The position numbers and the translations under genes were made by a program. Under the pieces are notes generated by a model that did no database searches, was not told where the DNA came from, and saw only the letters and a list, made by a program, of their open reading frames with translations. A DNA stretch of 64,000 bases from Paramoeba atlantica (lineage: Eukaryota; Protista; Discosea), in assembly GCA_977017575.1 (NCBI GenBank), contig CDRNVI010000071.1:186001-250000 (forward strand), written 5' to 3'. Shown piece after piece: positions 1,871-37,044 of this stretch. Every line of letters starts with the position of its first letter. Position 1 is the first letter of the stretch.

Positions 1871-2869
1871 ATGGTAAAATCCAAGTACCGTCCCCCAAAG
1901 GGGGGGATGACCCCTATAGGTAAGACATTATTGCGCCTGAGGATCGAAGACGGTGTCCCAAAGAAGCAACTTGCACGATAATTTAATATTTCAGTAAAAT
2001 ATGTGAGGCAATATCTGAAAGCAAAAGAAACCAATAAAACCAAAATATTTACACCGAAAAAAAATATTTTACGTCGCAGAAAAAAAATAGTAACCATTAT
2101 TTCACCAAAAGACCTTGCCGGAGTGCCGAAACACAGCAGCGCTAGATGCATGGCGGGGAGATTGAGTAAAAAGGGGGTACATGTCACAAAACGCACTGTT
2201 CAACGTGACTTAAAAGCAATGAAATATACTTATTCCCCACGCCATGTTACTATGGCGTTGACCGAACGTCAGAAGGCTAAAAGGGTTGAGGTTGCCTTAG
2301 CATGGAATGGGGATTCACGCATAATTGTATTTTCTGATGAAAAAATCTTTGATACTAATGACATGCGTAAGAAAATGTGGGTTGCCCCGGGCGAAAAGGC
2401 TGCTTCAAGGCAGAAAATGCGTTGGGCCCCAAAATACCATGTGTGGGGTGCCACTGGAGTTGGGTGGCGTTATCTAGCTATTCTTCCCAATGACAGCTCA
2501 ATTACGAGCGGAAAGTATATTAAAACCCTGCGTAAGACTCCTTTCCCCCGTAATTTTATTTTTCAACAAGATGGAGCAGGCGCACACACTGCAAAAATGA
2601 CAAAGTCTTATCTTTTTGTATCAGAAATTCAGTATATCAAAAATTGGCCTGCCAACTCACCTGACCTCAATCCTATAGAAAATGTATGGGAAATGATACA
2701 GCAACGAGTATGTGGAATGAACCCCTCCAGTACTACTTCGCTTATTAGGTGTGTAAAAAAAGCATTTGAAGAAATCTCCCGAAGGCAAGTAAATAAAACT
2801 GTTTTAAGCTTCGATCGTCGACTAGAAGCCTGCGTAAAGCGCAAGGGAGAAAAAGTGAAAAAGTGGTAA
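1871..2869 (+). pseudogene. Tc1/mariner (IS630-Tc1) transposase, DD35E, one in-frame stop near 1980
   Basis: FSDEK, QQDGAGAH and WPANSPDLNPIENVW motifs. The frame continues upstream of the listed ORF to ATG 1871 through a single TAA. Imperfect inverted repeats at ~1685-1795 and ~2930-3035. Confidence 0.85.
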
Positions 2870-4018: not shown

Positions 4019-4336
4019 TTAATTTCTCATTTCGATGAGCATAGTGCTTCTCACTTCAAACTTCTCAAGAGTGTGAGGTAGGTTTTCTTTTACGTAAGAT
4101 CCTGAGAGCTTTTTATAATCACGAACAAAAATATTTACAAGGTTTGGGGGGAGAGAACCTAAATCTACACGTCCTTCAAAAAGATTCTCATGCAGGTAGA
4201 TGGAAGTCATGGAATTTGGTAATTTCTCTAAATTCGGTGTTCCACAAAAGGCATTGTGTCAAAGACTAATAAACTGAAGTTTTGTTGGGAGGTGGGTAAG
4301 ATCGAGATACCCTGATAACTTATTGCATTTCATATA
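4019..4336 (-). pseudogene. 3' part of an LRR gene disrupted by retroelement insertions (continues at 8522-8590)
   Basis: Translates YMKCNKLSGYLDLTHLPTKLQFISL*HNAFCGTPNLEKLPNSMTSIYLHENLFEGRVDLGSLPPNL, the same 23-aa LRR as the intact family members. Confidence 0.8.
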
Positions 4337-7300
4337 TTGTATCATACAGGTAATCCTGCAGAGATTTATGTGGTGAAAACGCGCACTGAACGCGTTTTAG
4401 TCACCTGTTTCTATCCAGCGTCACCAAGAACGTTCTCCTCCATCCAATTTTTGCCATTGCGGTTTTGATATACTATGAAGCTCCCTCTCAGAGCCTTCAC
4501 GGTCATATTGCGCCGGCACTCAGCCACCAGCTCATCATTACCCACAAATAGAGAGTTCAGAGTTCGACCAGCACTGCTTATTTTTCCTCTCGCTCCGACT
4601 TCGAAAACGAGTAGGAAAGTGCTCGGGTTTGTGAGCTTGCGGGAATGGTAGAGATTTGTGTACTTGGCAGTTTTTCGTTCGTGTGCGTAGACAAAATTTT
4701 CCTCCCAGGGGCACGTCAATTCTATAATATACTCCTCCCCGTTGGACAGTTTCACCCACCCATCCGGTCGCAGCTCGGTGTCGAGTTCCGTGAGCCACGG
4801 AGGGGTAGAGCGAAAGTGAGGGAGGTCAAAGTGATATAGACTGGTCCCTTGGAATTTCTGCACAGAGTTTGCGAGGGCTTGTAGCACCATGTTATGTCGC
4901 AGAGTATATCGTCCTTGCTCGAGTGCTTTTCTACACCCGGAGAGAATATGTCGCGCGGTTTGCGTTTCAGTATCGCAGATGGGACACTTGTCGCTTGTGT
5001 GTGTCGATACGCCCCATTTGCGGAGAGACACTCTAGTAGGGAGTGGCGTTTCTGTGAGTACGGAAGCCGTAAATCGTGATAGCGATTCGCTTTTGAGATT
5101 ACATAGGGCGGCAGCGAAGTCCCTCGCGAGGTCTGCTTCCGTCGCTAAGCGGAACCATCTTCCCGCAACTGAAGTGCGCCTTTGCACGGCTTCCGAAAGA
5201 TGCCTCTCATATTCACTGTCGATAAGTCGTCGTACGTTATTGTGAGTTGAACCGAGTATGTCAGTCGGCGGACGAATGTACCCCGCTTTTCTCTTGTTTT
5301 CTTCTCTCCTGATGCGTTCTCGCAGGGCGTGCTGGACATCGGGATCGCGTGATTTCTCCATTTGTTCCACGGCGCTCGCGGTTGAAAGAAGCCATAGTTT
5401 GGATAAGCTCACGAGGTTCCAACCATGCTCGGAGTACAACAGTTCGCTTGTCGCGGATTTTGCTACATTTAACCATTTTCTGATTTCATTTGTAGCGCAT
5501 CGCTGGAGGCGCAGAACGTGGTTAAAAGTCAGACATGAATTGACAACAAAAGAGTAGCGAAGGCGGGAGATAAGGCGGGAGATACCATTATTGTATATCC
5601 AGAGTCGGGCGGGTAGGTCGTGGGCGCTGGAAGATACATGTATGTTGCGTAACCAGGTACGGAGTCGATTGCGTAGCTTTGGGAACAGAATTTTACCATA
5701 CTGGGCACCAGGTGCGAGAGTCATACCCAGGAATGTGCTACCATTATCGCATATTTGAGGAATAGGTGTTGCGTCAATCATTATCTGCGGTCGTCTTGTC
5801 ATGTAGCCTGAGTCTTGAGTCATTGCCATGTGTTGAATCCGACATTTCTTTGCGTTCAATTTCATTCCGATGCCGCCTAGAACTTTGACCAGTACGTTCG
5901 TGGCAATTTGCATTTCCTTTGGTGTGTTCGTGAGTATACTGAGGTCGTCAGCAAAGGCCTTCAGAGAGGTTTCCTTTCCATCCCAAGTGATTCCGTACTG
6001 TGGGCAACTTGAACGGATGAAGCGAAGAACCAATTCCATTGCCAAGTTGAATAAGATCGGCGACAGTGTATCTCCTTGTAATACTCCACGGCCGATCTCG
6101 AGCGACTTCGTAAGGCCTTCAGCACACTTGATTTGAATAGATGCTCCTTTATACAGCGCGCTGATATAGTTAATTAGAATTGGGGAGACACTGGCCCATT
6201 TTAGGGATTGTAACAGTACTGCGTGGGGGATAGATCCGAAAGCGTTCTTGATATCGAATTGTGCCAGTAAGTATTGCCGTTTGTGACGTCGTTGGTGTTC
6301 AAGGAGCTCGCATAAGACTTGTGTATGCTCGACGGTCCCATTCATGTGTGGTAGAAATCCTTTTTGTACTGATGTATCGAGCGCATGAGAATCCAAGGAA
6401 TGTTGAAGGATTCGGTGGCTCAGGATTGAATGGAAAAGTTTCCCTATGCAACTAGTTAAGCTTATCGGTCGCCAATTCTCCATAGTTGATGTAGGACCTC
6501 CTTTGTGTATGAGGCGAGTTACGGCAGATTTCCAGGTGGGGGGACAAACCCCGAATTTAAGGATGTCATTGAATACTTGAGCGATGTGGACAAAGATAGG
6601 GCTACAACGCTTGAGCAGAGCGTTGGATACAGTGTCTGATCCAGGAGCAGCGCCCGAGCGCTTGGAAGATACAGCAGATGCTATCATTTCGGCGTCAATA
6701 TCCGACCATGGTATGTCGATGTCAGGCCGTGGTCCCAAGAACTCGGCGGGGGGTATGCTGTGATTCTCTTCAGGTTTTGACAATGATGCCGCGAAGAAGT
6801 TCTCAACCTCTTGAAGAGGTACTGTAGGGTAAGACGTCTCGGGTTCCTGGATTGGGTCAGTGCGATCTAGGCATTCGCCCGCAGCTGTCCACGGGTTTCT
6901 CTGGAACCGAGTTAATGCCCATCGTCGATCGATTTCCCTCTTCTGTAGATTGGCTTCCTCCACGTACAACTTCAACGCTTTCTCTGCTTCCTTAATTTCT
7001 CCTCGCTGCTTGTTTCTCGCGACCCCCTTCATGAAGGTAAGTGCACGTTTGAGTTGACGAACATGTGTGCGAAGCCTCTTCGTGGTACGTTCGATGGCCA
7101 AGGGCCGCCAAGGGGGGATATTGCCATCTCTACTAACATGAGGTTCCGGGGAAGTGCGTGTATGAGAGAGTTCGTGGTTTACAGCCTGCGTACCGCTCAA
7201 GTTTCCTGTCTCGGATGGCCAGCTAGGGTGATACTGTGGTGATATTATGCTAGCATCGGCAGGAGATGTCCTCGTAAACAAATTCCTGAGTGACCATATT

Positions 7301-8521
7301 CGATTCTGACTGTTTTCTTCGACGATCATGACCCCTGTCTTGCAACATTGGTGTTTGCACTGAGTTTTATTGCTGCATATGTGCCGACACGGGCGACAGT
7401 TGGCCGTGTTTGCTGATATGGCGGACGACGGCGGATGACCGGTTGGCAGTTCCTCATACTGGGCCTCTTCGCTCGGTATGGCATCTGTCGAGACTTGCGG
7501 ATCGGTTTCTATCGATGTGGCTACTGTCGGTGGACTATGTGACCGTGTTAATGGTGACTCCCCGAGGTGCCGTTCTGGTCGAGGATTATCTGTAGCACCC
7601 GTGATGAGGACTCCTATTTTGCAGCACTGGTGCAAACAATTTGTCTTGTCGCGGCACGTATGCTTACAGGGCCTTCTGCCGGGAGCTAGTGAACTGTCTA
7701 TAGCCACGGCTTCCGAAGAGGGAAGAGGGACGCTAGGATGCACAGACCTTTCGGGTTTCACTTTGCAACATACGTGAAGACATGCTGCTTTGTCCCGGCA
7801 TTTATGGGCACAAGGGACACTTGGTTTAGTGGGCGGTAGTTTTGACACCTTGACGGGAGCATCACGGATTCTATATGGCGCGTCGTATGTGACCTCCGGG
7901 CAACGTTGGAGTTGTTCAACGGGTTGGGCCTTACGGGTCACGTGTGATATGCGGAATCGTCGTAAGCCTGGCACGTCACCGCCGCGCAATTTCTTTGTGA
8001 CGGCTTTGCCAAGCGCGTTCGAGGAGGAGTATTCTGTGTCAAGATGCATGTCGGAGTCTGTATAAGCAGAGCTCCAGCTCGTGTGATGAAATGTGCCACT
8101 AAGGTTTCCAATTTCATGGTACTCAACGTACTCGCATGCGTCGTTCTCGATGACATCTTGAGTGGTACACGTTTGTACTATCAGACCATCGCTCCTTTTG
8201 CTTCCCGACTTCAGGGTTTTTCCGAGGGAAGCTTCTGCTGTGTGCGTGCTTGAGAAAAACTCTCGTTCGGTAAGGGTGATGGCTGCGGCGTGCGTGTCGG
8301 GAAAATAGGACCACGAAACGCTATCAGAGGGGCGGATCTTCACTGGCAGCGCACGACTTCGGACGAAGTGAAAGTTCTGGGGGTGTCGCTGCGCGCTGAC
8401 AGGTCCTCGAGGGAGGCCGTCGTGCGCGTGGGGAGCTGGGGGTGTGACATTCGAGACCATGCTCCGAAAGATAAGTTTAGTACAAAGTTAATAAATCAAC
8501 AAGGTACAGAAACTGTATCTT
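4337..8521 (-). mobile_element. Full-length HERO-like RT+RLE non-LTR retrotransposon (copy A) with a 5' spliced-leader fragment
   Basis: Removing 4337-8521 restores the LRR frame (LPESLTYI|YMKCNKLSG). Single long ORF, 36-nt 5' UTR preceded by an SL-like sequence, hairpinned 3' UTR, no clear TSD. Confidence 0.85.
4411..8460 (-). CDS. Non-LTR retrotransposon polyprotein, 1349 aa: 3 Cys/His zinc-binding repeats, RT, CCHC finger, restriction-like endonuclease
   Basis: RT motifs QKGFLPHMNGTVEH, FDIKNAFGS, QGDTLSP, AFADD. CPICDTETQTARHILSGC finger. RLE motifs YTLRHNMVL, RPDGW, IIELTCPWEENFVYAHERK, resembling HERO-clade elements. No stops. Confidence 0.92.
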   Translation of the reverse strand: MVSNVTPPAPHAHDGLPRGPVSAQRHPQNFHFVRSRALPVKIRPSDSVSWSYFPDTHAAAITLTEREFFSSTHTAEASLGKTLKSGSKRSDGLIVQTCTTQDVIENDACEYVEYHEIGNLSGTFHHTSWSSAYTDSDMHLDTEYSSSNALGKAVTKKLRGGDVPGLRRFRISHVTRKAQPVEQLQRCPEVTYDAPYRIRDAPVKVSKLPPTKPSVPCAHKCRDKAACLHVCCKVKPERSVHPSVPLPSSEAVAIDSSLAPGRRPCKHTCRDKTNCLHQCCKIGVLITGATDNPRPERHLGESPLTRSHSPPTVATSIETDPQVSTDAIPSEEAQYEELPTGHPPSSAISANTANCRPCRHICSNKTQCKHQCCKTGVMIVEENSQNRIWSLRNLFTRTSPADASIISPQYHPSWPSETGNLSGTQAVNHELSHTRTSPEPHVSRDGNIPPWRPLAIERTTKRLRTHVRQLKRALTFMKGVARNKQRGEIKEAEKALKLYVEEANLQKREIDRRWALTRFQRNPWTAAGECLDRTDPIQEPETSYPTVPLQEVENFFAASLSKPEENHSIPPAEFLGPRPDIDIPWSDIDAEMIASAVSSKRSGAAPGSDTVSNALLKRCSPIFVHIAQVFNDILKFGVCPPTWKSAVTRLIHKGGPTSTMENWRPISLTSCIGKLFHSILSHRILQHSLDSHALDTSVQKGFLPHMNGTVEHTQVLCELLEHQRRHKRQYLLAQFDIKNAFGSIPHAVLLQSLKWASVSPILINYISALYKGASIQIKCAEGLTKSLEIGRGVLQGDTLSPILFNLAMELVLRFIRSSCPQYGITWDGKETSLKAFADDLSILTNTPKEMQIATNVLVKVLGGIGMKLNAKKCRIQHMAMTQDSGYMTRRPQIMIDATPIPQICDNGSTFLGMTLAPGAQYGKILFPKLRNRLRTWLRNIHVSSSAHDLPARLWIYNNGISRLISRLRYSFVVNSCLTFNHVLRLQRCATNEIRKWLNVAKSATSELLYSEHGWNLVSLSKLWLLSTASAVEQMEKSRDPDVQHALRERIRREENKRKAGYIRPPTDILGSTHNNVRRLIDSEYERHLSEAVQRRTSVAGRWFRLATEADLARDFAAALCNLKSESLSRFTASVLTETPLPTRVSLRKWGVSTHTSDKCPICDTETQTARHILSGCRKALEQGRYTLRHNMVLQALANSVQKFQGTSLYHFDLPHFRSTPPWLTELDTELRPDGWVKLSNGEEYIIELTCPWEENFVYAHERKTAKYTNLYHSRKLTNPSTFLLVFEVGARGKISSAGRTLNSLFVGNDELVAECRRNMTVKALRGSFIVYQNRNGKNWMEENVLGDAG

Positions 8522-8524
8522 TAT
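8497..8524 (-). other. Spliced-leader exon-like sequence joined to the 5' UTR of retroelement A
   Basis: ATAAAGATACAGTTTCTGTACCTTGTTG contains the euglenozoan SL core ACAGTTTCTGTAC and ends in TTG like trypanosomatid SLs. It is followed by non-GT sequence, as in a trans-spliced mRNA. Confidence 0.8.
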
Positions 8525-8590
8525 GTAAGTTAGACTTTCTGGGAGATGGCAGAGATCTACAGTTCGCACAAACTGATTGTCAAAAATATA
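8522..8590 (-). pseudogene. One 23-codon LRR repeat stranded between retroelements B and A
   Basis: Translates YIFDNQFVRTVDLCHLPESLTYI, in register with the repeat resuming at 4336. Confidence 0.75.
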
Positions 8591-9180
8591 TTAATCATGC
8601 AGTTATACTGCAGAGATTAGCCCTAGGTAGGTAAGCACGCCCAAAACGTGCTACTTACTCGGGGATTACCACTTTATTGGAAGCCTTGCACCTCCCACGT
8701 GGGGTTGTCGCGGTGCTGGTAGATAACAAAGCTTCCCCGGAGTGCCCGCTGGACCATTCTCTCCCTGCACTCGGAGGCAAGGCTCTTGCATCCTCCGAAG
8801 AGAGAGTTCAGCGCGCGGGTTGTGGCGTTTAACTTTCCTCTTGCCCGAACTTCAAAAACCAGGTGGAAGGTGGAAGGGTTTTTTAATTTCCTCTGGTTAT
8901 AGATGTGAGAGTATTTACGAATCTTACGCTCGTGTGCGTCCGTGAAGTTTTCTTCCCAAGGGGAAGTCAGCTCAATGATGTATTCCGACCCGTTGTGCAA
9001 CTTCACCCACCCGTCTGGTCTCAATTCAGTTTGTTGCGAGAGCCAGGCGGGAGGGTTCCTGTGGAGGTACAGGTCGAAGTGCGAATGGGCCGCTGATGGT
9101 GATGCTGCTACGGTGTCCGCTAGTGTGAGCAGGATAAGGTCGTGTCGGTAAGTGAATCGTCCCTGACTGAGCGCAATTGG
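8591..9180 (-). mobile_element. 5'-truncated HERO-like element (copy B): endonuclease C-terminus plus 3' UTR
   Basis: Translates ALSQGRFTYRHDLIL...TELRPDGWVKLHNGSEYIIELTSPWEENFTDAHERK, homologous to A. The 3' UTR has the shared terminal hairpin. Confidence 0.85.
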
Positions 9181-9337
9181 GCACCCAAAAAGTTAGCCTA
9201 TGGTCACTTATCGTGACGGGGGGTTTATATACACTTACACTTATAATTTATATACACATATTTGCTACTTTCGCTTATAAGGTCAGTAAAAAAACCTTTC
9301 GAATGTCTCGATTTTTTTTCTTTTGTATACAGCCATT

Positions 9338-9836
9338 CACGTTGTTTATCATGCGCTCTTTGGCGCAGAGATAATCCCCTTAATGCGACGGCCGATATCA
9401 TCGGCACATAATCCGCCCACAACGGATGTCGCCAAAGGGGGTTCGACACGGACTCGGTCGGTAGAGGTGGTCCAGGCAACTCACCACCTCTTTACGCAGC
9501 CGGAGGGGCGCACTGCAACCGACCGCTGCCTCGCGATAATGCGAGGCAGAGTCACGCCCAGTGGTCCTCAAGGGAGGCCACCATGGCGCATAGCTCCCGG
9601 GAAGAGACAGGCGCGAGAAGAAGAAAGCCGGGGAGGGAAGAAAACTCACTCAAGGAGTGAGCCGGGGAGGGGTGAAAAGTCGGAAGTACGTCCCCTACTT
9701 CCACGACAAGAGGGACAGTCCCTGCTAGCCGTCAGCCGGAAACGGGCATTTAAAAGGAAAATGTATGCCCGTTTCCGGGAAAAGAAAGGAAGGGCTAGCA
9801 AAATGTACCAACAAGGTACAGAAACTGTATCTTTAT
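9338..9836 (-). mobile_element. SL-headed, HERO-tailed non-autonomous retroelement (candidate SINE), 499 bp
   Basis: Interrupts one arm of a Tc1 TIR; the intact arm at ~11915-11950 shows the empty site. The 5' end is SL 28 nt + GTAC, the body is a run of hairpins, and the 3' end TATCTC-TGCGC-caaaga-GCGCA-TGAT matches the HERO 3' motif. Confidence 0.75.
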
Positions 9837-10062
9837 ATTAATTATCACTGTTGCGCTGGTAATGTGTGCTAGTAGTGTCGGCATGAGTGTCACCTAATAG
9901 TACCCATAGGTAGTTCACCTCAGTTCGTTCTGCCCAAGAATTAAGAATGAATTTAAAAAAAAAGCATTCGAAAGATTTTTTTGCTACCTAACATAAATAA
10001 AATATAGCATCAAAAAAAAGATAAAAAAGAATTGCCCAAGAGAGTATATGCCCACAAATTTA

Positions 10063-10930
10063 ATACTTTGTATTCCCCCACGCGCCTTCAACACTGCCTT
10101 CATGCGGGCAGGCATGCTGTCCACCTGGGTACGACATACTGAGGCCGGTATGTTCGCCCACTCCTTCTTAACCCTCTCCCACAACTCTCGGACCCCACTT
10201 GGCGGATCATCGTGGTCCGCAAGGCGCCGCTTGAGCTCCCCCAAAACATTCTCGATGGGGTTTAAGTCAGGGGACTGCGGGGGCCACCGCATGACTTCAA
10301 ACCCGGTACCCTGGAGGTGCCGTTGCGCACACCGGCTGGTATGCTTGGGGTCGCTATCCTGTTGGGAGATAACTTTTCCAGGATCCAAGCCCATGCCATC
10401 AATTGATGGGACAAAATTTTCCTGTAAAATCTCGATGTACTGCTCTGCATTCAAGTTCCCTTGAACTAGACGCACATGTCTCACACCACTTCGGGACATA
10501 CACGCCCAAATCATTACATGACCCCCTCCATATTTGACCGTAGGGATCACCCCCTTTTCCCCCAGTTCCTCCCCTGGGGTCCCCCATGTCCATGACTCCC
10601 CCCCGTCTCAAAGCGCCAGATCTTGGTCTCGTCCGACCACACTACTGGCTCTCAATCATGGACTGTCCAGTGCTCATGGGCAGTAGCGTAGTCCATCCGA
10701 AGCTTTCTATGTCGCTTGGACAAGTACGGCTTTCGGACACGCTTCCTTCCCTTGTGTCCGAAGCGTTTCATCGAAACGCGGATGGATTGTGGGACGACAT
10801 CCACAACACCCTCCTGGCGGAGTTGAGAGGAAACCTCGCGCGCAGACTTACCCGAAAACACAAGTCGTCGCAGCGCGTCGTGCGCACGACTCGGAAATCT
10901 TGCGAGGGTGACCCCTCTTTAGCCTGCGAG
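10063..10930 (-). pseudogene. Tc1 DD34E transposase, broken by stop/frameshift
   Basis: HTH segment AREVSSQL...RKPYLSKRHRKLR; catalytic part VKYGGGHVMIWACMS, QQDSDPKH, WPPQSPDLNPIEN. 34 residues lie between the second D and E. Confidence 0.88.
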
Positions 10931-12618: not shown

Positions 12619-13281
12619 CTAATTGTCTCCTGGTAAGATCAACACTTGCTTTATTTTCGTTCGCGATCGAACGCGAAATGTGACAAGCGATGGTGGAAGT
12701 TCGTCAATGACTACGTTTCCCGAAAGATTTCGATTTCCCGTTAAACTAAGCACTTGTAGACCGATGGGAAGTTTTGAAAAACTAACCCATCCGTCGAATG
12801 CGTTCTTATCCAATTTTAGCTCTTTCATACTCAGAGGCAATTTATCTAATTGAAGCTCCCCGGTAAACTGATTTTGATGAAGATCCAGTGTTATAATTTC
12901 AGGAGGCATTAAATCCAACGGCAAAGTTCCGGTAAGCTTGTTCAAGGAAAGGTCAATAAATCGCAACGTATGAGGCACGTGGACCCAAGAAGGAGGTCCT
13001 TCCAATTCAACCCAAGACCAATTTAACGTGTCCAATTTTCCATGCGGATTGCATTTTACAAGTGGCCATTCGCAGGCAGGATATGTTGTGTTCCATTGCG
13101 GAAGACAATGTTTGAGCTTTTCTACAAAGTTATGGAGTTCGTATTCCTGTGGCAAAGAAGCGCCACGCACTTTGGCAGGTCGATTGCGTGGCACGTCCTC
13201 AGTTGCACCGTGCAGTAGCGCTCCTGTCATAATAATAATAATGAAAGAAGACACAATCACTAAATGATTAAAGAGCAACAA
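12619..13281 (-). CDS. Short leucine-rich-repeat protein (LRRNT cap + LRRs)
   Basis: Hydrophobic N-terminus, W...CEWPLVKC cap, repeats LDLHQNQFTGELQLDKLP. The true start is uncertain. Confidence 0.85.
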   Translation of the reverse strand: MLLFNHLVIVSSFIIIIMTGALLHGATEDVPRNRPAKVRGASLPQEYELHNFVEKLKHCLPQWNTTYPACEWPLVKCNPHGKLDTLNWSWVELEGPPSWVHVPHTLRFIDLSLNKLTGTLPLDLMPPEIITLDLHQNQFTGELQLDKLPLSMKELKLDKNAFDGWVSFSKLPIGLQVLSLTGNRNLSGNVVIDELPPSLVTFRVRSRTKIKQVLILPGDN

Positions 13282-31688: not shown

Positions 31689-33066
31689 AATTAGTGTTCG
31701 GAGTGACTGACAAGTGAGATTGCAAGGACGAATGCAAGATTGGAAAGAATGCATAGATTGAGAGAATACGATTGTAAAGAGTGGAGACTGTGCAGCTAAC
31801 CGGTGCCATCTCGTGCCGTCTTGTGCCAATTCATGCCAACCAGAACTGGGAATAATGAGACTTTTTTTAGGGATACAGAAATCACATGCATTTTTTCATA
31901 CCCTGTACCTCAATGCCCCCTCCACGGAATAATTAGGCCTTGGTGACATCGCGCGGGCCCTCACTATTTCATTTTCTTAATAAGTACGTAAGTAATGAGT
32001 GCTCATAGTTGTAACGATCTTTTGCTGCTACGTAACGCTCTTATCAACTTCTAAGAAACGGGGTAAACTATATATATATATATATACATGTATATACATG
32101 TATATACTCAAATGTATTTCATCATAACTTGCTAAAGGACTAACGAAGGGGACGTCCGCAACCGCCCCATTCGCCAGTCTCCTTCGAGGACAGTTCAATG
32201 CCACCAAGATGACAAGCTTCATTTCGGGAGTCATGCGAGGCAACCCAGGGCAAAGTGGACGAGGGAGATACCAATAGTTTAGCTGCGGCAGTTTCTAAAG
32301 GAAAAACGACATCTCTACCGTTTTAGGCGCTTGCCTTCATGCCATAAGGGAGATACCGTTTTTCCTTTGGAAACTGCCGCACCTAAACTATTGGTATCTC
32401 CCTCGTCCACTTTGCCCTGGGTTACATAGGAAAAACATGTTAGTAAAATGTTAGTAGTAAAATGTTAAAATTAGTGTTCGGAGTGACTGACAAGTGAGAT
32501 TGCAAGGACGAATGCAAGATTGGAAAGAATGCATAGATTGAGAGAATACGATTGTAAAGAGTGGAGACTGTGCAGCTAACCGGTGCCATCTCGTGCCGTC
32601 TTGTGCCAATTCATGCCAACTCATGCCAATTCGTGCCAACTCATGCCAACCAGAACTGGGAATAATGAGACTTTTTTTAGGGATACAGAAATCACATGCA
32701 TTTTTTCATACCCTGTACCTCAATGCCCCCTCCACGGAATAATTAGGCCTTGGTGACATCGCGCGGGCCCTCACTATTTCATTTTCTTAATAAGTACGTA
32801 AGTAATGAGTGCTCATAATTGTAACGATCTTTTGCTGCTACGTAACGCTCTTATCAACTTCTAAGAAACGGGGTAAACTATATATATATATACATGTATA
32901 TACATGTATATACTCAAATGTATTTCATCATAGCTTGCTAAAGGACTAACGAAGGGGACGTCCGCAACCGCCCCATTCGCCAGTCTCCTTCGAGGACAGT
33001 TCAATGCCACCAAGATGACAAGCTTCATTTCGGGAGTCATGCGAGGCAACCCAGGGCAAAGTGGAC
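31689..33066. repeat. Tandem direct repeat of a ~0.6-kb non-coding block (31689-32262 and 32468-33066), each leading into a palindromic element
   Basis: Both units start aattagtgttcggagtgactgacaag and end gaggcaacccagggcaaagtggac. They contain atgccaac 10-11-bp repeats and (TA)n. Confidence 0.85.
32243..32422. repeat. ~180-bp palindromic element (GAGGGAGATAC family)
   Basis: acccagggcaaagtggacgagggagatacc... / ...ggtatctccctcgtccactttgccctgggt, followed by tacatag. Confidence 0.85.
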
Positions 33067-35484
33067 TTTGCCCAGCAGACTTATCCATAGACACCGATCA
33101 GCATACCACACCAGACATCGGACACTTCGAAGAGGTCAGGGATCCGGAGCTCCCGACCGTAAATCCGCCCTCACTAGGATACATGGATGACGCCACACAC
33201 CACACACAAACATCAACCAATGAAGTCAATTATCGCCCCTGTCGGCACATATGTAGCAACAAAGCTCAGTGCAAGCATCGATGTTGCAAAAATGGTGTCA
33301 TACAACCTAGCACGGAGGTTGTACTCCGCGAACCCGTCCGTACCTCTCCAGACCTGCACACCAGCAATGACAACACCCCTGCCCCAACAGCGCCTCGTCG
33401 CAACTGCGCTCATAAATGTAAGGACAAGGCAACATGTAAACATCAATGCTGCCAGAAAGGAGTTCTCCTCAAAGTCGCTGAAGTAGCGTACTCTGCCATA
33501 TGCTGGACCACGAGAAATATACTGTGCCCTGCAATGGGTGATGCGGAACGCGCCGCAAAAGCTTCACTACCGCCCCCTCCACGCGCAACAACCTACCCCC
33601 CAGTTCACACCAACCCCTCGAATCGCTCGAGTCCAATACTGAGCCCTGTGCGGAATGCACCACTTGTCCACGCCCCGCAACATGATTCCCCTTCTGTACG
33701 CCGCTCCTCACCTTCTTTACCCCTTGTGCAGTCCGCAACAGATCCCACGCCTCTGCCCTTACCTTTACCTCCCCCACCAGAAGGAAACTGCGAACACACG
33801 ATATTGCAGCGCATCCCTCGTGTCCGGCAAGTCCCGGCTACCCGACCTCTCCCTGAACTGCAGAATCTACTCGAAACATTCCGCACAATAAATGGAGGTC
33901 GCGTTCTAGTCCGTTTCACAGAGGAACAGTGGGAGAGTATTATTGCGAAGATCGAGGAACGCTGCAACTCGTATATCCACCTGGCGCGAAACAAAGAGGA
34001 CGCCCTGTCGCAAGCTGAAATACTCTCAGCAATCCTCGCTGTAACTGCATTCGAGGCCGCACGGGAAAACGATCCGACGCACGGCTTTCTTATACGGACC
34101 AGAACTGGCAGAGCCCGAAGAAACTCACGACCCTTAGCCATTGAACGCACAGTGAAAGTACTCAGTCAACACGTTCGACAACTTAAACGTGCGCTAACGT
34201 TCATGAAGGGTCCTGCGTGAAACAAGCAACGAGGGGAAATAAAGGAAGCCGAAAAGGCACTAAAGCAGTACATGGAAGAATCCAGTATGCAGAGGAAAGA
34301 AATCGATCGACGGTGGGCTCTTACGCGATTCCAGCGAAATCCCTGGACAGCCGCGGGCGAATGCTTAGATCGCGTCGACCCATCTACCTCAGAAACTGAG
34401 ACGTCCTACCCTACAGTTCCTGTACAGGAGGTTGAAAGATTCTTTGTGGGCTCAATGTCTAGACCAGAAGAGATACACAAGATTCCTCCCGCAGAATTTA
34501 CGAAACCAATTCCCCTTGATGAGATGCAATGGTCAGATATTGACTCAGACATGATCGCAGCAGCCGTCGCATCCAAACGCTCTGGGGCTGCCCCAGGCTC
34601 GGACACTGTATCGAACGCGCTGCTAAAGCGCTGCGCCCCTGTCTTTACTCACATGGCACAGGTGTTTAATGATGTCCTAAAATTTGGTGTATGCCCTCCA
34701 ACCTGGAAAACTGCGGTCACTCGACTTATCCACAAAGGGGGCCCCACCTCAAGTATGGAAAACTGGCGGCCGATAAGCTTGACTAGCTGCATTGGGAAGC
34801 TTTTCCACTCAATCCTCAGTCACCGTATCCTTCAGCATTCCCTGGATTCCAATGCCCTGGACACAACAATACAAAAAGGCTTCTTGCCGCATATGAATGG
34901 GACAGTTGAGCACACCCAGGTCCTTTGCGAGCTCCTCGAGCACCAGCGGCGCCACAAAAGGCAATACGTGCTTGCCCAGTTTGATATCAAAAACGCGTTT
35001 GGATCCATACCCCATACAATTTTATTTCAGGCCTTAAAATGGGCGCGCGTCTCACCGATCCTCATTAACTACATCAAAGCGCTGTACGAACGAGCGTCTA
35101 TGCAAATTAAATGTGCAGAAGGACTCACGAAGTCTATTGAGATAGGCCGTGGCGTTTTGCAGGGAGATACGCTTTCGCCTATTTTATTCAACTTGGCGAT
35201 GGAGCTAGTTCTGCGTTTTGTCCGTTCAAGTTGCCCCGAATACGGGATCACGTGGAATGCGAAAGAATTTTTTCTAAAAGCCTTCGCAGATGACCTCACT
35301 ATTCTGACAAATACCCCCCAGGAAATGCAGAATGCTACAAACGCACTCGTCAAAGTTCTAAGCGATATTGGGATGAAACTAAACGTGAAAAAATGCCGGC
35401 TGCAACACATGGCGATGACGCAAGACTCTGGATATATGACACGCCGACCACAGATCATGATCGGCACGTCACCTATCCCACATA

Positions 35485-37044
35485 CAGGGGTGAAAACCTC
35501 GTGGTGGGGGGGGTCTAAAATTCGTAAAAATTATCCAATTTTGGAAAGTAATAGCGCATTCGAGAGCTCTCACAGAGTTGTATGTTTTAGCACTATTTGC
35601 GGCCTGTGACTCAACATGAAACGATGAGACAAAAAAAATCATGATTTTTTTTCTTGCCCAAATTTACGTTTTTTCAGTTTTTAGCTGTTTTTCAGTCAAT
35701 ATTAGCACTATATGCCCCAGAAACGGATTCGTTCCCGAACCTCACGTGGTGTACTCAGCGACAGGTCCTATTCCTCCCCCGCACGGGTGATACCAAGTCA
35801 CCGTATGCTTCTTGTCTCAGATTATCTTGAGACAGGGTCCTATTCTCGGACAGCCCAAAACTTCGGCGTCCACGAAAATACAGTAAAATGTCTTGTGATA
35901 CGCTATGAGAACACTGGAGACGTGGAAAGCTCTCCTATTTCACGCCCATCTCCTGTCAGTACCCCTGCGCTGCACGAAGCAGCTATCCGCCTCATTGATG
36001 AGGGATACCGTGACCTCCCGTACGGGATTGAGAACTGGTGTGCACTCCATAGAGTTGTGCTTTCTCTTGGATTTCAGTGTTCAAGACCAACTTTGGTTAA
36101 CGCCATGAAGAGCCATGGTATGATCATGCAAACTTTAAAAAGAAAGCCCGCACTGACCGATGAACACAAGAGGAAACGAGTGCATTTTTGTTCTGAGATG
36201 CTCACTTGGTCAGATACCCAACTGAGACAAATTGTTTTCTGCGATGAGAAGAAGTTCACTTGCGGTAGGGGACGAAACAAAATTACTTACCTTTGCCGGA
36301 AGACTGACCCCGCCAAGGAACAGCAGGGAGAGCTAGAACCTTGGTATGGAGGGAACGGCGTCATGGTGTGGATGGGGGTCAGTTTAAATCATGGATTTCA
36401 TCTACACATTTTTCCCTCCCACGACCCTTCCGGCCGAAAAGTAACTGTAACAGGGGATGTTTTCAATGACGCCATGAAGAAGCGCAAAGGACTTTTAAAT
36501 TATTTGAGGCGCCACCCATCTGGGGTCGTTGCAATGAATAATTGTCCTGTTCATAATTCTGCGCGAACAACCTTTCGCAACGAAGGTATTAATGTACTCT
36601 CTTGGCCTGCAAAATCCCCCGATTTAAACACCATTGAAAACCTTTGGGGGACCATGGACAGGATCAAAAATGATCTTCGACCCAAGAATCGGGCTGAATT
36701 AGTATCGGCCATTGAGACAGCGTTCGAAAGATTACAATCAGAACGCAAGCAAGAATGTATTAACACGATGAGCAGTTTCCGCAAGCGTTGTCGCATCGTT
36801 ATTGAGCGAAACGGGTCTTCCTGTGGGTATTAAGGGTAATTTTTGACCATTTTTTACAGTTTTTCAAATTTGCAAATCGTGTTTTTGACCCTTCCATCAA
36901 AGGGGGGTACCCCCCTAACCCCCGCAAACTGCCTATCTTAAAACATACAACTCTGCGAGAGCTCTCGAACGCGCTATTATTTTCCAAAATTGGACAAATT
37001 TTACGAATTTTAGACCCCCCCCCACCATGGGATTTTCACCCCTG
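35485..37044 (+). mobile_element. Tc1/mariner element with ~105-bp TIRs and TA TSD, inserted in the RT of copy C
   Basis: TA|caggggtgaaaa ... ttttcacccctg|TA. Removal restores PIPHICDNCSTFLGMTLAPG (copy A: PIPQICDNGSTFLGMTLAPG). Confidence 0.92.
35712..36833 (+). CDS. Tc1-like transposase; second catalytic Asp appears replaced by Asn
   Basis: N-terminal HTH, VFCDEKKF, VAMNNCPVH (expected xQDNA), WPAKSPDLNTIENLW. 32 residues lie between this N and E. Confidence 0.85.
   Translation: MPQKRIRSRTSRGVLSDRSYSSPARVIPSHRMLLVSDYLETGSYSRTAQNFGVHENTVKCLVIRYENTGDVESSPISRPSPVSTPALHEAAIRLIDEGYRDLPYGIENWCALHRVVLSLGFQCSRPTLVNAMKSHGMIMQTLKRKPALTDEHKRKRVHFCSEMLTWSDTQLRQIVFCDEKKFTCGRGRNKITYLCRKTDPAKEQQGELEPWYGGNGVMVWMGVSLNHGFHLHIFPSHDPSGRKVTVTGDVFNDAMKKRKGLLNYLRRHPSGVVAMNNCPVHNSARTTFRNEGINVLSWPAKSPDLNTIENLWGTMDRIKNDLRPKNRAELVSAIETAFERLQSERKQECINTMSSFRKRCRIVIERNGSSCGY

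What the first reader, a model, noticed from the sequence alone, without database searches (positions are those of the whole stretch)
8461..8524. Full-length retroelement fossilised with a trans-spliced leader at its 5' end
Seen: SL-like 25-28 nt ending TTG sits 36 nt upstream of the ATG of the intact 1349-aa ORF, followed by AT rather than GT, and lies inside the boundaries defined by the restored LRR frame. Established: all kinetoplastid mRNAs receive the SL by trans-splicing; R2-type elements usually free their 5' end with an HDV-like ribozyme. Inference: this element is co-transcribed in host polycistrons, capped by SL trans-splicing, and reverse-transcribed into the SL. The new copy has lost its own splice acceptor, which predicts either single-round copies or reliance on cryptic upstream AGs.
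Basis: partly seen in the sequence, partly recalled or inferred. Interest (0 to 1): 0.85.

Follow-up and report, generated by a model that had tools for sequence, protein, structure and literature searches.

The report
Retrotransposon headed by host spliced leader
An intact R2-type jumping gene inside a leucine-rich-repeat gene of a kinetoplastid-like protist begins with a DNA copy of the last 28 bases of the cell's own spliced leader; this leader piece is a conserved, inherited part of the element that pairs with its 5' UTR, not the scar of a single copying round.

Summary
On the minus strand, 8524-8497 is an exact copy of nt 11-38 of this organism's 38-nt spliced leader (SL). It is joined at the exon's last base to a 36-nt 5' UTR and an intact 1349-aa RT/endonuclease ORF of the R2 superfamily. 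The element spans 8524-4334 and lies in sense inside an LRR gene whose reading frame continues across it.

- The SL comes from RNA, not from insertion into SL genes. The flanks are LRR codons, and 32 of 35 true SL genes are uninterrupted.
- The single-round or master-copy model fails. All 17 genomic copies of the conserved UTR core, from subfamilies 70-98% identical, carry the SL at the same junction, and none has a polypyrimidine-AG there.
- The 5' UTR is an imperfect inverted copy of SL nt 13-38 and forms a conserved 5' hairpin.
- A partner SINE (9836-9342) carries the same truncated head and the same 3' hairpin.
- Thirteen sites in the genome carry a stacked 16-nt relic after the internal CAG, which shows occasional re-trans-splicing.

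How the 5' end at nt 11-16 arises is unresolved, because no RNA data were available. This scan has reported the same phenomenon several times elsewhere in this genome.

The parts
8497..8524 (-). DNA copy of spliced-leader exon nt 11-38 (28 nt). It is the first bases of the element and the 5' arm of the terminal hairpin.
   Evidence: It is an exact match to the 28-mer found 788 times in the genome and to the exon of the tandem SL RNA genes. Sequence read.
8461..8496 (-). 36-nt 5' UTR. It is an imperfect inverted copy of SL nt 13-38 (the anti-SL arm plus loop), followed by CGGAGC and the ATG.
   Evidence: Folding pairs SL nt 13-38 with the UTR. The consensus structure has 20 pairs, kept in 6 subfamily representatives. 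UTR identity is about 90%, against 70-80% for the adjoining ORF. The arms survive in variants that lack the loop.
4411..8460 (-). Intact ORF of 1349 aa. It contains three N-terminal CxHxCx2Kx2CxHxCC motifs, an RT domain, a CCHC knuckle and a PD-(D/E)xK-type restriction-like endonuclease.
   Evidence: RVT_1 scores 8.8e-31 and zf-RVT also hits. R2 protein structures match at E 1.8e-34 over residues 588-1296. The nearest named relatives are R2 and NeSL-like elements.
4334..4410 (-). 3' UTR ending in a conserved stem-loop (about 4365-4341; AUCUCUGCAGG..CCUGUAUGAU) plus about 7 nt. There is no poly(A).
   Evidence: The 3' fold and its counterparts in LINE fragment A and the SINE have changed stem bases. 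Family alignments end at 4348-4333. The LRR frame resumes at 4333 or 4336.
8525..8585 (-). 61 bp of LRR coding sequence, the upstream target flank of the element. It lies between LINE fragment A and the SL head.
   Evidence: It translates as FDNQFVRTVDLCHLPESLTY, in frame with the downstream flank.
4019..4333 (-). Downstream LRR coding flank of the interrupted host gene. It contains one in-frame TGA.
   Evidence: It translates as MKCNKLSGYLDLTHLPTKLQFISL*HNAF...LIEMRN.
8586..9192 (-). 5'-truncated fragment (copy A) of a different subfamily of the same LINE. It inserted at the equivalent point of the preceding LRR unit.
   Evidence: tblastn gives 57% identity to residues 1173-1339 of the ORF. 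Its 3' stem-loop ends at 8586.
9342..9836 (-). Non-autonomous partner (SINE, ~495 bp). It has the same SL nt 11-38 head joined at the exon end to its own body (GTACATTTTGC...), and the same 3' stem-loop.
   Evidence: 151 genomic copies have unique flanks. The body is not the SL intron, which reads GTATGAGAAGC. 3' hairpin shown.

Best explanation
This is a young, intact, site-specific non-LTR retrotransposon of the R2 superfamily (RT plus a C-terminal restriction-like endonuclease). It inserts in sense orientation at one point of the LRR coding repeat, after LPxxLxxL.

Its 5' end is a heritable module built from the host spliced leader: SL nt 11-38 followed by a UTR that is an imperfect inverted copy of the SL, together folding into a terminal hairpin.

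Most likely history and mechanism:
1. An ancestor's mRNA was trans-spliced like any kinetoplastid mRNA and then reverse-transcribed, which wrote the SL into DNA at the exon-end junction (inferred from the junction).
2. Since then the SL piece has been passed on as part of the template RNA through many rounds. This is shown by its presence at the same junction in all subfamilies and by the co-adapted UTR.
3. The promoter-less copies are transcribed within the host's sense-strand polycistronic or LRR transcripts (inferred).
4. The RNA's 5' end is set at or near the base of the SL/anti-SL hairpin, at nt 11-16. This could be by processing, by an exonuclease stop, or by initiation there (inferred; the mechanism is open).
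5. The element's protein nicks the LRR motif and copies the RNA by target-primed reverse transcription starting at the 3' stem-loop. The partner SINE shares that stem-loop and the SL head.
6. Small duplications at the 5' junction are template-jump signatures.
7. Occasionally the genomic relic is trans-spliced again at its own internal CAG and that RNA is copied, which gives stacked 16-nt relics.
For: - Identity of the 28-mer with the SL exon.
- Unique LRR flanks on both sides, a restored frame and no target-site duplication.
- About 20 LINE 5' ends from subfamilies 70-98% identical all start with truncated SL at the same SL|UTR junction. 17 of 17 genome-wide hits of the UTR core are preceded by ..TGTTG.
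- The hairpin has z = -4.4 and the same fold in all subfamilies. There are one-sided changes that keep or improve pairing, and the loop-deleted variants keep both arms.
- More distant families from a second assembly of the same or a sibling organism also start with truncated SL and have other anti-SL stretches. These are L067 (42% aa identity, inserted in (TG)n) and L068.
- The SINE has the same head and the same 3' stem-loop, and it inserts at the same LRR point.
- R2-superfamily protein.
- Stacked relics lie mostly after the internal CAG: 13 sites, against 2 after AAAG.
- Individual copies carry point mutations in the relic, as expected for DNA-encoded sequence.
Against: - There is no RNA evidence. 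The 5' end of the transcript, its cap state and any read-through from the host gene are all untested.
- Perfect conservation of the 28 nt across families as far apart as 42% aa identity could equally mean the SL is refreshed from the host each cycle.
- The reason for the truncation at nt 11-16 is unknown. The starts are ragged, with modes at nt 11 and 13 and a few at nt 5-9. This fits a hairpin boundary only loosely, and the SINE's predicted fold leaves nt 11-18 unpaired.
- The SL side of the hairpin is invariant, so no two-sided covariation is possible (0 compensatory pairs).
- The genome searches list only the best candidates, and one pattern excluded a quarter of possible contexts, so a rare SL-less master cannot be fully excluded.
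Confidence: 0.55

Rival explanations
1. One reading: every round starts from a master copy with its own splice acceptor. The mRNA is trans-spliced, reverse transcription runs into the SL, and daughters are dead-end copies that lack an acceptor.
For: The junction lies exactly at the SL exon end. The genome is full of poly(A) retrocopies of SL-capped RNAs, so trans-spliced RNAs are reverse-transcribed here.
Against: No SL-less 5' end was found among about 20 full 5' ends or among 17 of 17 UTR-core hits, across several subfamilies that each have their own young copies. The UTR is co-adapted to the SL. Copies lack nt 1-10, whereas poly(A) retrocopies of capped RNAs keep them.
Confidence: 0.1
2. 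The SL head is renewed every cycle without a canonical acceptor. One route is the reverse transcriptase switching templates by homology, from the element's relic to abundant SL RNA or SL-mRNA. Another is pairing of SL RNA with the anti-SL UTR guiding a non-canonical joining. Either would keep the head identical to the host SL.
For: The 28 nt are identical in families whose proteins are only 42-76% identical, and in the SINE. Anti-SL stretches occur in several unrelated UTRs. Template-jump signatures are common at 5' junctions. R2-type reverse transcriptases are known to jump templates (PMC3636483, citing Bibillo and Eickbush).
Against: Nothing here demands it, because purifying selection on a functional hairpin explains the same conservation. 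Copying SL RNA to its end should often give nt 1-10, which these families lack. No RNA data exist.
Confidence: 0.2
3. The SL head is target-derived. The element is a CRE/SLACS/CZAR- or NeSL-like element that inserts into SL sequences, and the 28 nt are target sequence or a fossil target-site duplication.
For: The family belongs to the endonuclease class that includes the SL-gene specialists (PMC12278014, PMC5814959). Counted from the conserved CAGTTTCTGTAC core, the commonest start (nt 10/11) corresponds to the nt 11/12 site used by SLACS and CZAR. This uses my recollection of the T. brucei SL and is a lead only. Two copies have another LINE's 3' end abutting nt 11 (L048 and L049).
Against: The upstream flanks are unique LRR codons, never nt 1-10 or an SL promoter. 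The downstream flank is LRR, not SL. No copy carries the true intron GTATGAG. 32 of 35 SL genes are uninterrupted. The starts are ragged. A duplication ending exactly at the exon end in every family would be a coincidence.
Confidence: 0.05

Closest known systems
R2 elements (R2 superfamily, restriction-like-endonuclease non-LTR retrotransposons)
   Same: It has a single ORF with RT, a CCHC knuckle and a C-terminal PD-(D/E)xK endonuclease, and it matches R2 protein structures at E 1e-34. It inserts sequence-specifically in a fixed orientation with no or little change to the target. It has a structured 3' UTR instead of poly(A). It depends on host transcription. Some R2 RNAs carry host sequence at the 5' end, namely upstream 28S (from my own knowledge).
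   Different: The target is an LRR coding motif, not 28S rDNA. No HDV-like ribozyme was detected. The host-derived 5' sequence is the spliced leader, which does not flank the target site. The N-terminal Cys/His motifs are unlike the usual C2H2/Myb.
CRE clade (SLACS, CZAR, CRE1/2) of trypanosomatids and NeSL-1 of nematodes
   Same: They are kinetoplastid or trans-splicing hosts' RLE-type LINEs whose biology is tied to the spliced leader (PMC12278014, PMC5814959, PMC3636483).
   Different: Those elements insert into SL RNA genes (between nt 11 and 12), make target-site duplications, and (for CRE) end in poly(A). This element carries the SL inside itself, sits in LRR genes, has no duplication and no poly(A), and leaves the SL genes intact.
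Dinoflagellate retrogenes with relic DinoSL ('recycled cDNAs')
   Same: The SL is DNA-encoded at the 5' end of retro-copied RNAs, and stacked truncated relics are created by re-splicing at an AG inside the SL (PMC6050394, PMC5585692; here).
   Different: Those are cellular genes copied in trans. Here the SL heads an autonomous retrotransposon and its SINE, is always 5'-truncated, and is paired with a co-evolved anti-SL UTR.
L1Tc/ingi Pr77 5' module of trypanosomatid LINEs
   Same: It is a conserved 5'-terminal module shared by autonomous and non-autonomous kinetoplastid retroposons, and it solves the 5'-end problem in polycistronic genomes (PMC8190864, PMC5814959).
   Different: Pr77 is unrelated in sequence, and its transcripts explicitly lack an SL. 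It acts as an internal promoter plus an HDV-like ribozyme. Neither activity has been shown here.

Membership tests
R2 superfamily (RLE-type non-LTR retrotransposon) | Reverse transcriptase domain of non-LTR type | tested here: met
   RVT_1 at E 8.8e-31, residues 651-888. R2 and L1 ORF2 structures align over the RT.
R2 superfamily (RLE-type non-LTR retrotransposon) | C-terminal CCHC motif plus PD-(D/E)xK restriction-like endonuclease, and no APE domain | tested here: met
   The sequence shows CPICx8Hx4C, then RPDGW...E-L-T. The alignment to R2 structures runs to residue 1296. There is no Exo_endo_phos hit. Catalytic residues were not mapped one by one.
R2 superfamily (RLE-type non-LTR retrotransposon) | Sequence-specific insertion | tested here: met
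   LINE and SINE copies lie in sense after LPxxLxxL of LRR units. Copies A and B sit at equivalent points of adjacent units.
R2 clade proper | HDV-like self-cleaving ribozyme at the 5' end | tested here: inconclusive
   There is no Rfam ribozyme hit at gathering threshold or at E<=10 over 8150-9900. Divergent ribozymes can escape these models.
CRE clade (SLACS/CZAR/CRE1/2) | Insertion inside SL RNA genes at a fixed exon position | tested here: not met
   The flanks are LRR codons. The true SL genes (exon plus GTATGAGAAGC) are intact in 32 of 35 cases.
CRE clade (SLACS/CZAR/CRE1/2) | Target-site duplication and a 3' poly(A) tail | tested here: not met
   There is no duplication. The flanks join in frame with at most a few bp lost. 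The 3' end is a stem-loop plus about 7 nt.
CRE clade (SLACS/CZAR/CRE1/2) | RT phylogeny groups with CRE references | not tested
   No CRE reference sequences were retrieved. The nearest named hits were R2 and NeSL-like.
SL-tagged retrocopies (recycled trans-spliced RNAs) | DNA-encoded SL joined exactly at the exon 3' end to the transcript body, outside SL genes | tested here: met
   The junction reads ..CCTTGTTG|ATTTATT. The true intron is absent.
SL-tagged retrocopies (recycled trans-spliced RNAs) | Stacked truncated relics generated at an AG inside the SL | tested here: met
   This holds genome-wide and in a sister LINE copy (L062): 13 sites with the 16-nt relic after CAG. It is not present in this copy itself.
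SL-tagged retrocopies (recycled trans-spliced RNAs) | Full-length SL and a poly(A) tail, as in passive retrocopies | tested here: not met
   This family starts at nt 11-16 and has no poly(A). Other families in the genome do show poly(A) plus nt 1-38.

The most novel reading that the evidence does not exclude
The SL relic plus the anti-SL UTR is a dedicated 5'-end device. It lets promoter-less R2-type LINEs and their SINEs live inside kinetoplastid polycistrons. It would either mark where the element RNA is cut or protected out of the host transcript, or recruit SL RNA by base pairing so that the head is rewritten from the host leader at every cycle. This would be a third solution to the LINE 5'-end problem, beside internal promoters and HDV-like ribozymes.
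Probability: 0.25. Interest if true: 0.85.

Novelty: new variant of a known kind. Interest (0 to 1): 0.68.

Why it matters
Non-LTR retrotransposons must regenerate their 5' end in every generation. The known answers are internal promoters (L1, and Pr77 of L1Tc/ingi) and co-transcription followed by ribozyme cleavage (R2).

In organisms where every mRNA gets a spliced leader, an element that has built the leader into its own sequence and paired it with a complementary UTR would be a different answer. It also links mobile-element biology to trans-splicing in a new way, because the known SL-associated LINEs (CRE, NeSL) target SL genes rather than carrying the SL.

The family also gives a ready-made marker (full, truncated or stacked SL) for reading the history of RNA-to-DNA flow in a kinetoplastid genome, as DinoSL relics do in dinoflagellates. 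It also shows a LINE/SINE pair that repeatedly disrupts one surface-type gene family (LRR) at a single codon position.

Tried and rejected
1. RNA evidence. The look-up of sequencing runs found no RNA run holding the region. The single read-laying run on four DNA contig sets gave only repeat-driven depth spikes and loose ends from other SL copies, and no empty-site joint.

2. Rfam. There were no hits at gathering threshold in the window, and only noise at E<=10 over 8150-9900. No ribozyme or SL RNA model matched.

3. I first read 9836-9809 plus GTACATTTTGC as a true SL gene with its intron, and the 151 such copies as SL-RNA-derived. This was wrong. The true genes read GTATGAGAAGC after the exon, so the GTAC copies are a SINE with an exon-only head.

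4. I first took CTTAC as the LINE's 3' end and 'aacttac' as part of the SL. Both are LRR flank.

5. A 28-bp target-site duplication equal to SL nt 11-38 is rejected. The insertions are clean, with no duplication.

6. I considered that the element's endonuclease trims the new copy exactly at SL nt 10/11, the CRE-equivalent site. This is weakened by the ragged genome-wide starts at nt 5-9, 11, 12, 13 and 14-16 and by the LRR-specific target. I keep it only as a lead.

7. Microhomology with the target as the cause of the nt-11 start is rejected. Several junctions show none.

8. A literature search for the SL sequence itself found nothing, so the organism was not identified. The old CRE1, SLACS and CZAR papers are not held.

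The 3' flanks of other LINE copies and the SL-gene arrays could therefore only be sampled through pattern searches.

Full report
WHAT IS AT THE COORDINATES

Reading that strand:
- 8524..8497 is ATAAAGATACAGTTTCTGTACCTTGTTG.
- 8496..8461 is a 36-nt UTR that begins AT.
- The ATG follows.

IS IT THE HOST'S SPLICED LEADER?

Yes.
- The 28-mer occurs 788 times (up to 2 mismatches) on both strands of the 45.7-Mb, 248-contig assembly. The reversed control gives 0.
- 419 copies continue upstream as CTTTAACG. In 30 sampled loci most of these follow a poly(A) run and precede a UTR and an ATG, so they are retrocopies of capped, polyadenylated mRNAs. Their first two bases vary.
- About 35 copies lie in tandem arrays of ~2.56 kb as the full exon followed by GTATGAGAAGCTTCGAAC. 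This is the classical kinetoplastid SL donor, so these are the true SL RNA genes.
- The exon is therefore about AACTTTAACG + the 28-mer (38 nt). The window carries nt 11-38.

ANATOMY OF THE ELEMENT AND ITS SURROUNDINGS

- The protein has an RVT_1 domain (E 8.8e-31), a zf-RVT-like region, a CPICx8Hx4C knuckle and an RPD...E-x-T nuclease motif.
- It aligns to R2 protein structures over residues 588-1296 at E 1.8e-34.
- Its named relatives are R2 and NeSL-like elements.
- The 3' UTR ends in a stem-loop (AUCUCUGCAGG..CCUGUAUGAU) plus about 7 nt, with no poly(A).
- The 61 bp upstream of the SL head (8585..8525) and the sequence from 4333 downward are LRR codons in one frame...FDNQFVRTVDLCHLPESLTY|MKCNKLSGYLDLTHLPTKLQFISL....
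- The element is therefore 8524..4334. It lies in sense inside an LRR gene whose start is at 13281..12619. There is no target-site duplication, and possibly a few bp were lost.
- Just upstream, 9192..8586 is a 5'-truncated fragment of another subfamily (57% aa identity). Its 3' stem-loop ends at the equivalent point of the preceding LRR unit.
- 9836..9342 is a ~495-bp non-coding element with the same 28-nt head and the same kind of 3' stem-loop.
- Tc1/mariner-like remnants lie further up.

(a) Insertion into SL genes is rejected.
- About 20 full 5' ends of this LINE, recovered from the genome (subfamilies 70-98% identical), all have unique upstream flanks, mostly LRR codons. None has SL nt 1-10 or promoter sequence.
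- None carries the true intron.
- 32 of the 35 true SL genes have an uninterrupted exon.

(b) A master copy with a polypyrimidine-AG was not found.
- Every one of those 5' ends has the SL joined at the same point.
- A genome-wide pattern anchored on the conserved UTR core returned 17 sites. All 17 are preceded by ..TGTTG of the SL.

The strict model of one splicing event and one dead-end copy per round therefore does not fit. The head has travelled with the element through the divergence of its subfamilies.

Two still more distant families also begin with truncated SL. They come from a second assembly that carries the same SL. One has 42% aa identity and is inserted in (TG)n.

NEW OBSERVATION: THE UTR IS AN ANTI-LEADER

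- The 36-nt UTR is an imperfect inverted copy of SL nt 13-38, so the first ~58 nt fold into a hairpin. The free energy is -13.9 kcal/mol for head plus UTR. For the first 145 nt it is -43.6 against -28.8 +/- 3.4 for shuffles, z = -4.4.
- The same fold is predicted for every subfamily. A consensus of 20 pairs is kept in six representatives.
- Changes occur only on the UTR side, because the SL side is invariant. For this reason there is no two-sided covariation.
- The UTR is about 90% identical between subfamilies whose adjoining coding sequence is 70-80% identical.
- Variants that have lost the apical loop keep both arms.
- Other families have different anti-SL stretches, for example TATCTTTATCG against nt 9-19.
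- In the SINE, the body starts with GTACA, which pairs with SL TGTAC.

I read this as evidence that the leader piece is a selected, functional part of these elements.

THE 5' TRUNCATION

- LINE and SINE copies start within the SL, never at nt 1-4. The mode is nt 11, then nt 13 and nt 14-16, with a few at nt 5-9.
- Poly(A) retrocopies keep nt 1-38.
- Several junctions contain short repeats of AAAGATA interleaved with a few bases of flank or of a LINE 3' end. These are typical of template jumps at an RNA 5' end.
- Counted from the conserved core, nt 10/11 corresponds to the SLACS/CZAR site between nt 11 and 12 (site from PMC5814959; the alignment uses my recollection of the T. brucei SL). Given the ragged distribution and the LRR-specific target, I treat this as a lead, not a finding.
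- Whether the boundary reflects RNA processing at the hairpin base, initiation, a stop of the reverse transcriptase, or trimming is open.

RE-SPLICING DOES HAPPEN

A search for two SL 3' ends within 30 nt gave 39 hits.
- The dominant class (13 sites, including a sister LINE copy, L062) is ...TTG|TTTCTGTACCTTGTTG. This is a new leader joined to the part of the old one that follows its internal CAG.
- Two sites follow the other internal AG.

This is the pattern known from dinoflagellate recycled cDNAs (PMC6050394, PMC5585692). It shows that transcripts of SL-headed copies are sometimes trans-spliced at cryptic AGs and copied again. It is rare compared with the several hundred simple heads.

MOST LIKELY MECHANISM

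Shown:
- An R2-superfamily LINE and its SINE insert in sense at one point of the LRR repeat.
- Both carry SL nt ~11-38 at the exon-end junction as an inherited 5' module.
- In the LINE this module is paired with an anti-SL UTR.
- Both end in a shared 3' stem-loop.

Inferred:
- The head was first acquired by reverse transcription of a trans-spliced RNA.
- Copies are transcribed with the host unit.
- The RNA 5' end forms near the hairpin base.
- The protein performs target-primed reverse transcription from the 3' stem-loop and joins the 5' end by template jumping.

They are weighed in the rival section.

COMPARISON AND NOVELTY

- By sequence this is a member of the R2 superfamily, but it fails the defining features of the CRE clade (SL-gene target, target-site duplication, poly(A)).
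- It works partly like dinoflagellate SL-tagged retrogenes and partly like R2 or L1Tc elements that carry a special 5' module.
- My searches found SL-gene-targeting LINEs and dinoflagellate retrogenes, but no description of kinetoplastid retrotransposons headed by the SL. L1Tc transcripts are described as lacking an SL (PMC5814959).
- This scan has already reported SL-headed LINEs and SINEs in other pieces of this genome, and the SINE in this window.
  - the failed master-copy test;
  - the intact SL genes;
  - the anti-leader hairpin;
  - the distribution of head starts;
  - the CAG-defined relic class.

LIMITS

There are no RNA data. The organism is unidentified. 

Noticed in passing
window 9342-9836 (-): A ~495-bp SINE-like element with the same SL nt 11-38 head and the same 3' stem-loop as the LINE. 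It has 151 genomic copies. Its body start, GTAC..., mimics a splice donor but is not the SL intron.
   Followed up: yes
window 8586-9192 (-): A 5'-truncated LINE fragment of another subfamily (57% aa identity). It inserted 61 bp upstream of the intact copy, at the same point of the previous LRR unit. Two independent hits have landed in adjacent repeats.
   Followed up: yes
window 33015-36833 (+): A degenerate copy of a related LINE, with three ORF pieces carrying the same CxHxCx2Kx2CxHxCC motifs. Its 5' end is lost in an AT/(TATACATG)n-rich stretch near 32880-32920, and it has no SL head.
   Followed up: partly
window 2003-2869 (+) and 9984-10550 (-): Tc1/mariner-type transposase remnants (..WPxxSPDLNPIENVW..). 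The second lies between the LRR gene's 5' part and the retroelement cluster.
   Followed up: no
L001-L004 (G000:C1, 5,093-bp tandem repeat): A full SL copy is flanked on both sides by the same 34-bp UTR segment (ACTTTTCTTATTTGTATTTCGCACGAATAAAAGT), inside a tandemly repeated unit. This suggests that a retro-copied 5' end recombined back into its own gene.
   Followed up: no
L005-L030 (sample of SL copies): Poly(A)-type retroposon and gene families carry the complete SL directly after the poly(A) tail of an upstream copy, as head-to-tail concatenates. SL positions 1-2 vary (AA, AT, AC, TC, GA), which is compatible with misreading of a modified cap-proximal base.
   Followed up: partly
window ~4262 (-), within 4019-4333: There is an in-frame TGA in the LRR gene downstream of the insertion (..QFISL*HNAF..). 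The host gene copy is probably a pseudogene, or already was one.
   Followed up: no
window ORF residues ~216-375 (about 7815-7335, -): Three repeats of a Cys/His motif, CxHxCx2Kx2CxHxCC, occupy the N-terminal region where R2 elements have zinc-finger/Myb DNA-binding domains. There is no Pfam match. It is a candidate target-recognition module for the LRR site.
   Followed up: no
G000 C97, C107, C11, C74: The true SL RNA genes lie in ~2.56-kb tandem arrays. Three copies with the true intron (C44:120283, C87:74389, C87:106947) lack an intact nt 3-10, and the C74 array has 7.3-kb gaps that contain SINE heads. The arrays are therefore occasionally hit.
   Followed up: partly
L067 (ENA ERZ24900291 ctg3877l): A LINE family only 42% identical in protein is inserted in a (TG)n microsatellite. 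It also begins with truncated SL, followed by a T15 run and a GTACAGAA anti-SL stretch.
   Followed up: partly
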